From the NCBI RefSeq assembly GCF_006345805.1, contig NC_042997.1:34906001-34970000 (forward strand): a stretch of DNA of 64,000 nucleotides. The letters run 5' to 3'. This DNA comes from Octopus sinensis. Its lineage: Eukaryota. Both the position numbers and the translations under genes were made by a program. The notes beneath the pieces are model-generated. The model was given only the letters and a program-made list of their open reading frames with translations, was not told the origin of the DNA and did not search any database. Positions 20,801 through 21,342 of the stretch are shown piece by piece (positions within the stretch are counted from its first letter, which is position 1; each line of letters begins with the position of its first letter).

Positions 20801-21342
20801 CTATGAGAGGTAGGACGTCCGATGTCGGTGGCATCTTTTCGGCCACTATCATTAAAAATACAGTCATGGACAGAAGTGTGGTAATCCCCATGGATATTTT
20901 TTCTCCTGAATCAGATGGCATATAAAAGCCGAGCAGAGCCACCAAAGTTATTAAGATACAGGGCATGACCATGTTGAACAAATAAAAAAGCGGGCGTCTT
21001 TTTATTAATATATGATAGTGAATAATGATGTAAGGTTCCTCGCAGCACGAGAAACGAACGACGTGCCGCTTTTGTTGAAAGCCGATCAGGGACCACTCTG
21101 AATTTTCGATGTAGTTTGACATGTCCCCATTGTCTTCACCGTTGGTTAATATATTAACTTGGTATGCGTCGTACGTCCATGACGCAAATTCCATGGAGCA
21201 GTTCTGTTCGTCGAAAGGAAAAAACTTGACATCGATGGAGCATGAACTCTTGAAGATGACCATGGACAACCAGGTGACGTTTCCCTCGCTGGTGACTATC
21301 ACGTTCGTACTGATGGACGATTCGAACGCCTTCACGTCAGCA
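20801..21342 (-). CDS. Internal coding exon (542 bp, phase 2 -> phase 1) of a nicotinic acetylcholine receptor alpha-type subunit, alpha9/alpha10-like architecture
   Basis: Translates to (S)ADVKAFESSISTNVIVTSEGNVTWLSMVIFKSSCSIDVKFFPFDEQNCSMEFASWTY...RFSCCEEPY...RRPLFYLFNMVMPCILITLVALLGFYMPSDSGEKISMGITTLLSMTVFLMIVAEKMPPTSDVLPLI(G). This shows the Cys-loop C-x13-C with FPFD, loop B SWTY, vicinal CC, M1, the GEK linker and M2. Acceptor ttcttttactcttcag|T at 21343/21342; donor ATAG|gtgagt at 20801/20800. Confidence 0.97.

What the first reader, a model, noticed from the sequence alone, without database searches (positions are those of the whole stretch)
21018..21191. nAChR alpha subunit with the whole Y190/K145/D200 gating triad changed while CC, TrpB and the cation pore are intact
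Seen: loop C reads RFSCCEEPYIII and the post-Cys-loop strand reads CSMEFASW. By motif alignment to muscle alpha1 numbering, Y190 is F (TTC, 21053-21051), K145 is E (GAA, 21191-21189) and D200 is I. W149, Y198, the vicinal Cys pair, E-1' (GEK), L9' and E20' are retained, with no stop or frameshift. Known: Y190, K145 and D200 couple ACh binding to gating, and Y190F alone strongly impairs activation. alpha9 lacks K145 but keeps Y190 and D200. Cephalopods have an expanded set of atypical nAChR-derived chemotactile receptors that generally lack the vicinal cysteines. Inference: this may be an intron-containing, CC-positive subunit with altered ligand specificity, either a candidate intermediate between canonical nAChRs and cephalopod sensory receptors or a non-principal subunit. 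A-to-I editing cannot restore any of the three residues.
Basis: partly seen in the sequence, partly recalled or inferred. Interest (0 to 1): 0.8.

Follow-up and report, generated by a model that had tools for sequence, protein, structure and literature searches.

The report
Octopus dopamine-gated channel DopC1 exon
The odd-looking "acetylcholine receptor" exon belongs to the octopus gene DopC1, which 2025 preprints already describe as a channel opened by dopamine rather than acetylcholine, and its three unusual residues are shared by the same gene in all the molluscs sampled.

Summary
One 542-bp exon on the minus strand (window 21342-20801) encodes the Cys-loop through M2 of a nicotinic-type subunit. 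It has E at K145, F at Y190 and I at D200. W149, Y198, the vicinal Cys pair and the cation pore (GEK, L9', E20') are kept.

It is not a new atypical acetylcholine receptor. Seventeen published in-situ (HCR) probe halves designed against Octopus DopC1 (LOC115218923) lie inside this exon, and all match the window with 0 mismatches. Three of them cover the three variant codons. Two junction probes stop matching at the exon ends.

Courtney et al. (bioRxiv 2025) showed that DopC1 forms a homomeric dopamine-gated cation channel (EC50 7.6 uM) that does not respond to acetylcholine or nicotine.

The residue changes are old. All 36 members of a well-supported mollusc clade (chiton, gastropods, bivalves, cephalopods) have F190, F or I at 200, and no K145. 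Dopamine-gated Daphnia relatives keep K-Y-D, so the triad does not set ligand choice.

The exon is under strong purifying selection (dN/dS 0.03).

The links to chemotactile receptors and to a non-principal subunit are not supported. The gene is already known. The only new point is that the mollusc clade lacks the triad, which the literature does not mention.

The parts
20801..21342 (-). Single coding exon (542 bp) of Octopus DopC1. It covers loop E, the Cys-loop, loops B, F and C, M1, M2 and the start of the M2-M3 linker. The first base completes an AAT (Asn) codon and the last base starts a GGC (Gly) codon.
   Evidence: Open frame. Pfam LBD plus membrane domains. Alignment to the orthologue's mRNA L001 stops at the exon ends. 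17 DopC1 HCR probe halves match with 0 mismatches and 2 junction probes match up to the ends. The exon is a GC island, 0.42-0.44 against 0.15-0.33 in the flanks.
21343..21362 (-). 3' splice acceptor: pyrimidine-rich tract TCAATTCTTTTACTCTTCAG ending in AG (21344-21343).
   Evidence: Sequence. The probe ...CTGTACAATAAT|GCTGACGTGAAG places the junction here.
20795..20800 (-). 5' splice donor GTGAGT.
   Evidence: Sequence. The probe CGTCCTACCTCTCATAG|GCTTGTAT matches 17/17 bases up to 20801 and then diverges.
21198..21242 (-). Cys-loop, C128 to C142 (CSIDVKFFPFDEQNC).
   Evidence: Invariant in all aligned relatives.
21189..21191 (-). GAA = Glu at the position of muscle alpha1 K145.
   Evidence: Covered by the probe encoding CSMEFASW with 0 mismatches. 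The mollusc clade has E/D/N/S/Q/H/R here, never K.
21165..21179 (-). Loop B, W-T-Y-D-A: W149 is kept, followed by the Asp reported as critical for catecholamine gating in Daphnia DopC1. Ala replaces the usual Gly.
   Evidence: The D188N result and the remark 'all but one dop-LGIC (alanine)' come from the Daphnia preprint.
21042..21053 (-). Loop C, F-S-C-C: Phe at Y190, the dop-LGIC-typical Ser at the X of YXCC, and the vicinal cysteines.
   Evidence: The probe encoding VVRFSCC matches with 0 mismatches. Ser is invariant in the 8-sequence alignment. All 36 clade members have F.
21024..21032 (-). Y-I-I: Y198 is kept, and Ile (ATT, 21026-21024) sits at D200.
   Evidence: The probe encoding PYIIIHYH matches with 0 mismatches. 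Other molluscs of the clade have F here, and nemerteans have I or M.
21264..21269 (-). Loop E Leu-Ser (within TWLSMVIF): a hydrophobic residue where alpha9/10 have Asp, plus the adjacent Ser conserved in dop-LGICs.
   Evidence: Ser is 90% conserved in the family against 12% in outgroup nicotinic-type proteins. Literature.
20919..20993 (-). M1 transmembrane helix (PLFYLFNMVMPCILITLVALLGFYM).
   Evidence: Pfam Neur_chan_memb starts here. Alignment to alpha7.
20838..20903 (-). M2 pore helix from E-1' (GEK) to E20', with L9'. This is a cation-type pore.
   Evidence: Cation selectivity was measured for DopC1 by ion substitution.

Best explanation
The exon is the large ligand-binding and pore exon of DopC1 (NCBI gene LOC115218923) of the common octopus (Octopus vulgaris / O. 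sinensis). The rest of the gene lies outside the window, beyond introns of more than 20 kb (downstream) and more than 42 kb (upstream).

DopC1 is a pentameric Cys-loop channel of the alpha9/alpha10-like nicotinic branch. According to published oocyte recordings, five copies assemble into a homomeric cation channel. Dopamine opens it (EC50 7.6 uM), noradrenaline and adrenaline do so more weakly, and acetylcholine and nicotine do not.

The protein keeps most of the nicotinic aromatic box (W149 and Y198 here, Phe at 190; W55 and Y93 are seen in the 94%-identical orthologue), the vicinal cysteines, and a cation pore. It also carries the residues reported as dopamine-channel hallmarks: Ser between F/Y190 and CC, Asp after SWTY in loop B, and Leu-Ser in loop E.

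The E145/F190/I200 state is not a recent cephalopod change. K145 is absent from the brachiopod, bryozoan, annelid, nemertean and mollusc members sampled, while rotifers and ecdysozoans keep it. Y190F and the loss of D200 characterise the whole molluscan DopC1 clade and the nemertean copies.

Shown here: the gene identity, the clade-wide residue pattern, and purifying selection. Taken from the literature: the ligand, ion selectivity and homomer formation. Inferred: the K145-D200 salt bridge and Y190 hydroxyl switch of muscle receptors are dispensable in this family and are replaced in molluscs by a hydrophobic F190/(F or I)200 pair.
For: Identity. All 17 probe halves from the DopC1 (LOC115218923) HCR set that fall inside the exon match the window exactly, 425 of 542 exon bases. 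Two junction probes match up to 20801 and 21342. The same probes show 0-9 mismatches against the orthologue mRNA L001.

Function. Courtney et al., bioRxiv 10.1101/2025.04.02.646353, report dopamine EC50 7.6 uM, cation selectivity, and no ACh or nicotine response.

Family. The hit P0073 is DAPPUDRAFT_55424, which that paper lists as dopamine-gated. A careful ML tree with the three trait columns masked gives the whole family 100/99 support and the 36-row mollusc clade holding the window 100/99.

Residue census. All 36 clade members have F190 and F or I at 200, and none has K145. Nearly all arthropod members have K-Y-D.

Selection. dN/dS is 0.03 at dS 1.1 against the mRNA of a related cephalopod, which also has F190 and I200.

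Dop-LGIC hallmarks are present.
Against: The functional data come from preprints and were not tested here. The probes may have been designed from the same reference assembly as the window, so their exact match proves gene identity but does not independently prove sequence accuracy. Accuracy instead rests on the orthologue transcripts and on the clade-wide pattern. Only one exon is visible, so the intactness of this particular gene copy beyond the window is inferred. The public protein search did not return the octopus protein itself; the nearest hit was 94% identical.
Confidence: 0.93

Rival explanations
1. An acetylcholine-gated nAChR alpha subunit whose gating triad has drifted, giving a weak or altered cholinergic receptor.
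For: The best solved-structure matches are alpha7, alpha6 and alpha3 chains (E 1e-53 to 1e-51). The CC pair, W149, Y198 and the cation pore are kept. NCBI names relatives 'alpha-10-like'.
Against: The gene is DopC1, and oocytes expressing it gave no ACh or nicotine response. Daphnia, Apis and Aplysia relatives are also monoamine-gated and not ACh-gated.
Confidence: 0.03
2. A transitional form between canonical nAChRs and cephalopod chemotactile receptors (CRs).
For: The gene is from a cephalopod and has a modified binding site. One loop-C position became hydrophobic (I200).
Against: The same residue pattern occurs in chiton, gastropod and bivalve orthologues, so it predates cephalopods. The exon is flanked by long introns, whereas CRs are described as intronless. 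A phylum-wide phylogeny lists DopC, CR and CR-like as separate clades. No chemotactile-receptor chain is among the 60 best solved-structure matches, which run down to muscle gamma and epsilon subunits. I did not build a joint tree with CR sequences.
Confidence: 0.01
3. A mainly accessory or complementary-face subunit that works in vivo in heteromers, for example with the second octopus family member DopC2, which gave no current alone.
For: Molluscs carry two family lineages: one with F190 and hydrophobic 200, and one mostly with Y190/D200 (heterobranch gastropods in it have F190). Octopus DopC2 is expressed in the optic lobe but is silent as a homomer. The complementary-face residue W55 is kept in the orthologue.
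Against: DopC1 alone gives robust dopamine currents, so it supplies a working principal face. I could not confirm that DopC2 (LOC115215511) is the Y190/D200 paralogue. Co-assembly has not been tested.
Confidence: 0.15
4. An assembly or sequencing error, or a decaying pseudo-exon.
For: Only one exon is visible in 64 kb of AT-rich, microsatellite-laden sequence.
Against: dN/dS is 0.03. The splice sites are intact. Transcript assemblies carrying the orthologous protein (20 contigs; the 8 fetched come from 8 different sequencing runs) have F190 and I200. All 36 clade members share F190. The expressed clone of this gene is functional.
Confidence: 0.01

Closest known systems
Octopus vulgaris/sinensis DopC1 (LOC115218923), dopamine-gated cation channel (Courtney et al., bioRxiv 10.1101/2025.04.02.646353)
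   Same: It is the same gene. Every probe half of its HCR set that lies in this exon matches the window exactly, and the junction probes define the same exon ends.
   Different: Nothing differs at the sequence level over the 425 bases covered. The paper does not comment on the K145/Y190/D200 positions (one search found no mention of loop C or the binding pocket).
Daphnia magna Dm-DopC1/DopC2 (D. pulex DAPPUDRAFT_55424 = P0073) and Apis mellifera DopC1
   Same: They are in the same family (100/99 support) and 64% identical over the exon. They share Ser in Y/F-S-CC, SWTYD and the loop E Leu-Ser, and have a cation pore. The D. magna and Apis channels are reported as homomeric catecholamine-gated channels.
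   Different: P0073 (DAPPUDRAFT_55424) keeps the full K145/Y190/D200 triad. Reported dopamine EC50 is 84 uM for Dm-DopC1 against 7.6 uM for octopus DopC1.
Vertebrate alpha9/alpha10 and alpha7 nicotinic receptor subunits
   Same: They share the fold, Cys-loop, vicinal cysteines, W149, Y198 and the GEK/L9'/E20' cation pore. Alpha7 chains are the best solved-structure matches. Alpha9/10 are described as the closest vertebrate homologues.
   Different: They are gated by acetylcholine. They have Tyr at 190 and Asp at 200, lack the Ser of Y-S-CC (alpha9/10 have Gly) and the loop B Asp, and alpha9/10 have Asp where DopC has the loop E Leu.
Second molluscan family lineage ('alpha-10' of Octopus bimaculoides P0028 and Argonauta P0022; probably DopC2)
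   Same: 73% identical over the exon, with the same domain layout and pore. K145 is also absent (Q).
   Different: It keeps Y190 and D200. It forms a separate mollusc clade. If it is DopC2, it gives no homomeric current; that equation is inferred, not shown.
Cephalopod chemotactile receptors (CRs)
   Same: They are nicotinic-derived pentameric channels of cephalopods with non-cholinergic ligands.
   Different: CRs are described as intronless, with a remodelled hydrophobic pocket, and as forming their own clade that is predominantly cephalopod. This exon has introns, a CC pair and orthologues across molluscs.

Membership tests
Cys-loop pentameric ligand-gated ion channels, nicotinic branch | Neur_chan_LBD followed by the Neur_chan_memb domain | tested here: met
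   Pfam E 9e-31 and 3e-21, both above the curated cut-offs.
Cys-loop pentameric ligand-gated ion channels, nicotinic branch | Cys-loop: two cysteines separated by 13 residues, with the FPFD core | tested here: met
   CSIDVKFFPFDEQNC, window 21242-21198.
Alpha-type nicotinic subunit | Vicinal cysteines in loop C | tested here: met
   TGC TGC at 21047-21042.
Acetylcholine-gated nAChR principal subunit | Full aromatic box and triad: Y93, W149, Y190, Y198 plus K145 and D200 | tested here: not met
   W149 and Y198 are present. Position 190 is F, 145 is E and 200 is I. Y93 lies in an exon outside the window and is present in orthologue P0001.
Acetylcholine-gated nAChR principal subunit | Current evoked by acetylcholine or nicotine | not testable with these tools
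   Reported as absent for this gene in oocytes.
DopC / cationic dop-LGIC family | Orthology or identity with a functionally characterised member | tested here: met
   17 of 17 in-exon DopC1 probe halves match exactly. The window is in one 100/99 clade with DAPPUDRAFT_55424.
DopC / cationic dop-LGIC family | Ser at the X of the loop C (Y/F)-X-CC motif | tested here: met
   TCG at 21050-21048. Invariant in alignment A1.
DopC / cationic dop-LGIC family | Asp directly after SWTY in loop B | tested here: met
   GAC at 21170-21168. Invariant in A1. D188N nearly abolishes responses in Dm-DopC1.
DopC / cationic dop-LGIC family | Hydrophobic Leu/Phe plus adjacent Ser in loop E, where alpha9/10 have Asp | tested here: met
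   TTG TCC at 21269-21264. Ser is 90% conserved in the family against 12% outside it.
DopC / cationic dop-LGIC family | 'Pair of loop C tyrosines / YXCC' stated to be conserved in dop-LGICs | tested here: not met
   The window and all 36 members of the mollusc clade have FSCC. The statement therefore does not hold for molluscan DopC1, so this is not a true defining feature.
DopC / cationic dop-LGIC family | Dopamine-evoked cation current | not testable with these tools
   Reported for this gene: EC50 7.6 uM and a reversal-potential shift in Na-free solution. The cation-type pore motif GEK...E20' is present.
Cephalopod chemotactile receptors | Intronless gene | tested here: not met
   The exon is bounded by AG and GT. 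The orthologue mRNA alignment and the junction probes stop at its ends, and neighbouring exons are more than 20 kb and more than 42 kb away.
Cephalopod chemotactile receptors | Membership of the predominantly cephalopod CR clade | tested here: not met
   The nearest relatives are chiton, gastropod and bivalve proteins. The literature separates the DopC and CR clades. I did not build a joint tree with CR sequences.

The most novel reading that the evidence does not exclude
The molluscan DopC1 lineage dismantled the classical K145/Y190/D200 binding-to-gating triad long ago: the Lys is missing from most spiralian members, and Tyr became Phe and Asp became Phe or Ile in the mollusc lineage. Octopus DopC1 nevertheless gates robustly, and with a roughly ten-fold lower reported dopamine EC50 than triad-intact Daphnia DopC1. 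If the substitutions contribute to that sensitivity, or reveal an alternative hydrophobic coupling between loop C and the beta7/beta10 strands, the two natural variants would form a ready-made pair for studying how agonist binding is coupled to opening in nicotinic-type channels. The literature I could read does not mention this and states that the loop C tyrosine pair is conserved in these channels.
Probability: 0.35. Interest if true: 0.45.

Novelty: already known. Interest (0 to 1): 0.25.

Why it matters
The answer is already published: it is a fast, ionotropic dopamine receptor that drives excitation in the octopus optic lobe.

This analysis adds three modest points:
- An exact genomic anchor for the main binding and pore exon.
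- Evidence that the E/F/I state is a clade-wide feature of molluscan DopC1, not a cephalopod novelty.
- The observation that dopamine gating occurs with the nicotinic triad either intact (Daphnia) or fully replaced (octopus). The triad is therefore neither required for gating nor the determinant of ligand choice in this family.

Tried and rejected
- Search for the other exons. tblastn of the window with a human alpha7-like probe and with the full-length orthologue P0001 found only this exon. A weak hit at 45733-45632 (E 0.06) was not reproduced with P0001 and I dismissed it.
- The word-indexed protein search needed a padded query, because an exon-sized query excludes full-length relatives. It returned no octopus copy of the gene; the nearest hit was the unnamed transcript protein P0001 at 94%. 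Species identity therefore came from the literature probes.
- The 50%-clustered representative search added outgroups but no names.
- The preprint's supplementary alignment is truncated as stored and lacks the octopus sequences. I therefore could not confirm that DopC2 (LOC115215511) is the Y190/D200 paralogue, or which Aplysia protein is LOC101853763.
- A scan for family-specific residues within the exon gave only six positions. Among them only the loop E Ser has literature support, and none explains the ligand choice.
- I skipped structure prediction, because the tool returns no coordinates from which contacts among residues 145, 190 and 200 could be measured.
- tRNA and Rfam scans of the window were empty.
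- The Jiao et al. 2019 and alpha9/alpha10 review papers contain nothing on these positions.

Full report
**What is in the sequence**

On the minus strand, window 21342-20801 is a 542-bp exon. A pyrimidine tract ending in AG precedes it, and GTGAGT follows it. Its 180 complete codons are open. They carry the end of the Pfam neurotransmitter-gated channel ligand-binding domain (E 9e-31) and the start of the membrane domain (E 3e-21).

The exon contains the following, in order:
- the Cys-loop, CSIDVKFFPFDEQNC
- loop B, CSMEFASWTYDA
- loop C, RFSCCEEPYIIIHYH
- M1
- an M2 reading GEKISMGITTLLSMTVFLMIVAEK

HMMER alignment to solved human alpha7 chains (E 1e-53) confirms the equivalences with K145, Y190 and D200. 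A-to-G editing cannot regenerate any of the three residues.

One limit applies. Only this exon of the gene lies in the 64-kb window. The flanking introns exceed 20 kb on the downstream side and 42 kb on the upstream side. The exon stands out as a GC island (0.42-0.44) in AT-rich, microsatellite-laden intron sequence.

**Is it a live gene?**

The closest public protein is P0001 (467 aa, 94% identical). It is known only from transcript assemblies of sequencing runs. Its mRNA aligns to the window at 85% nucleotide identity, and the alignment stops at the exon ends. Nei-Gojobori dN/dS is 0.03 at dS 1.1, which indicates strong purifying selection. P0001 also has F190 and I200, but Gln at position 145.

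**What gene it is**

A literature search led to Courtney et al. (bioRxiv 10.1101/2025.04.02.646353). They expressed 41 Octopus vulgaris Cys-loop channels in oocytes. They found that LOC115218923, which they named DopC1, forms a homomeric cation channel with these properties:
- It is activated by dopamine (EC50 7.6 uM), noradrenaline and adrenaline.
- It does not respond to acetylcholine or nicotine.
- It is expressed across optic-lobe layers.

Their supplementary probe list for DopC1 allowed a direct test.
- All 17 probe halves that fall inside this exon match the window with 0 mismatches. Three of them encode CSMEFASW, VVRFSCC and PYIIIHYH.
- The probe spanning the downstream junction matches 17/17 bases up to 20801. 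The probe spanning the upstream junction (LYNN|ADVK) fits the start of the exon at 21342.
- Probes for other exons match nowhere in the window.
- The same probes show 0-9 mismatches against the P0001 mRNA, so P0001 comes from another cephalopod.

The window is therefore the O. vulgaris/sinensis DopC1 locus.

**The family and the history of the three residues**

A padded-query search returned about 120 relatives that are 60-80% identical over the exon. They come from molluscs, annelids, nemerteans, brachiopods, bryozoans, rotifers, priapulids, nematomorphs and non-insect arthropods. Most are named 'alpha-10-like' or 'ligand-gated ion channel 4-like'. One of them, DAPPUDRAFT_55424 (P0073), is listed as dopamine-gated in the preprint's supplement.

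I built a careful maximum-likelihood tree with the three trait columns masked. The whole family has 100/99 support, and the window falls in a 36-sequence clade made up only of molluscs, also with 100/99 support.

| Group | 145 | 190 | 200 |
|---|---|---|---|
| Mollusc clade holding the window (36 sequences) | never K (E/D/N/S/Q/H/R) | F in all | F, or I in the two cephalopod rows |
| Nemerteans | D or W | F | I or M |
| Annelids | L or V | Y | mostly D (H and T in two rows) |
| Second mollusc lineage (includes Octopus and Argonauta 'alpha-10') | L/Q/T/W/H | Y, except heterobranch gastropods, which have F | mostly D |
| Arthropods | K | Y | D |
| Rotifers | K | Y | D |

On the tree, position 190 needs only three Y/F changes.

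So the Lys is missing from the brachiopod, bryozoan, annelid, nemertean and mollusc members sampled, and the Tyr and Asp changed before the mollusc classes split.

**How it works**

The gene encodes a principal, homomer-forming subunit. It keeps W149, Y198, the CC pair and a cation pore. W55 and Y93 are kept in the orthologue.

A second preprint, on Daphnia DopC1 mutagenesis (10.1101/2025.10.31.685654), gives hallmarks of dopamine-gated members of this family:
- a Ser between Tyr190 and the CC pair
- an Asp right after SWTY (D188N nearly abolishes responses)
- a hydrophobic residue plus a Ser in loop E, where alpha9/10 have Asp

All of these are present in the window exon.

P0073 (DAPPUDRAFT_55424) has an intact K-Y-D triad, and the D. 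magna channels were recorded as dopamine-gated and not ACh-gated. The triad is therefore not what switches the ligand, and octopus DopC1 shows it is not needed for gating either. I infer, but have not shown, that in molluscs a hydrophobic F190/(F or I)200 contact replaces the salt bridge and hydroxyl switch. That preprint states that the loop C tyrosine pair is conserved in these channels. This does not hold for the molluscan DopC1 clade.

**Rival explanations**

- A cholinergic alpha subunit is contradicted by the recordings.
- A bridge to chemotactile receptors is contradicted on four counts. The clade spans the mollusc classes sampled. The gene has introns, whereas CRs are described as intronless. 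Published phylogenies place DopC and CR in separate clades. No CR chain appears among the 60 best solved-structure matches.
- A purely accessory role is contradicted by homomeric function. Co-assembly with DopC2 remains open, because DopC2 is silent on its own. I could not verify that DopC2 is the Y190/D200 paralogue.
- Assembly error or pseudogene is excluded by selection, transcripts and the clade-wide pattern.

**Verdict**

However, it belongs to a gene whose unusual ligand was published in 2025, so it is already known. The residual interest is modest. The literature I could read does not note that the molluscan DopC1 clade has lost the whole triad. Octopus and Daphnia channels form a natural pair for testing whether the triad matters in this family.

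Noticed in passing
window 43468-43833 (-): A 121-aa ORF with a GIY-YIG nuclease domain (Pfam PF01541, E 3.7e-5, just above the curated cut-off) lies inside the upstream intron. It is probably a remnant of a mobile element.
   Followed up: partly
window 5576-5762, 6321-6555, 11167-11674, 12217-12544, 17861-17986, 39097-39304, 53946-54277: Long (TA)n, (ATGT)n, (ATAT)n and (ATT)n microsatellite arrays of up to about 500 bp. They account for most of the long 'YIYIYI' and poly-Leu ORFs in the window. Overall GC is 31.6%.
   Followed up: partly
L001-L008 (mRNA contigs encoding P0001): The nearest public protein is an unnamed transcript-only orthologue from another cephalopod (94% aa, 85% nt, dS about 1.1). 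It has Gln rather than Glu at position 145, so even within cephalopods that position is not fixed. Its species was not determined.
   Followed up: partly
P0008, P0010, P0018-P0021 (heterobranch gastropods, second family lineage): Aplysia, Lymnaea, Bulinus, Biomphalaria, Candidula and Elysia proteins of the other mollusc lineage independently have Phe at 190 while keeping Asp or Glu at 200. Y190F therefore arose more than once in the family (three Y/F changes on the tree).
   Followed up: partly
literature vs window 21042-21053: The Daphnia DopC1 preprint states that dop-LGICs keep the YXCC motif and the loop C tyrosine pair. Octopus DopC1 and all 36 molluscan clade members read FSCC instead.
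   Followed up: yes
window 21165-21167: Ala occupies the post-Trp 'Gly' position of loop B (SWTYDA). [quoted passage not shown] The chiton orthologue P0013 also has Ala there.
   Followed up: partly
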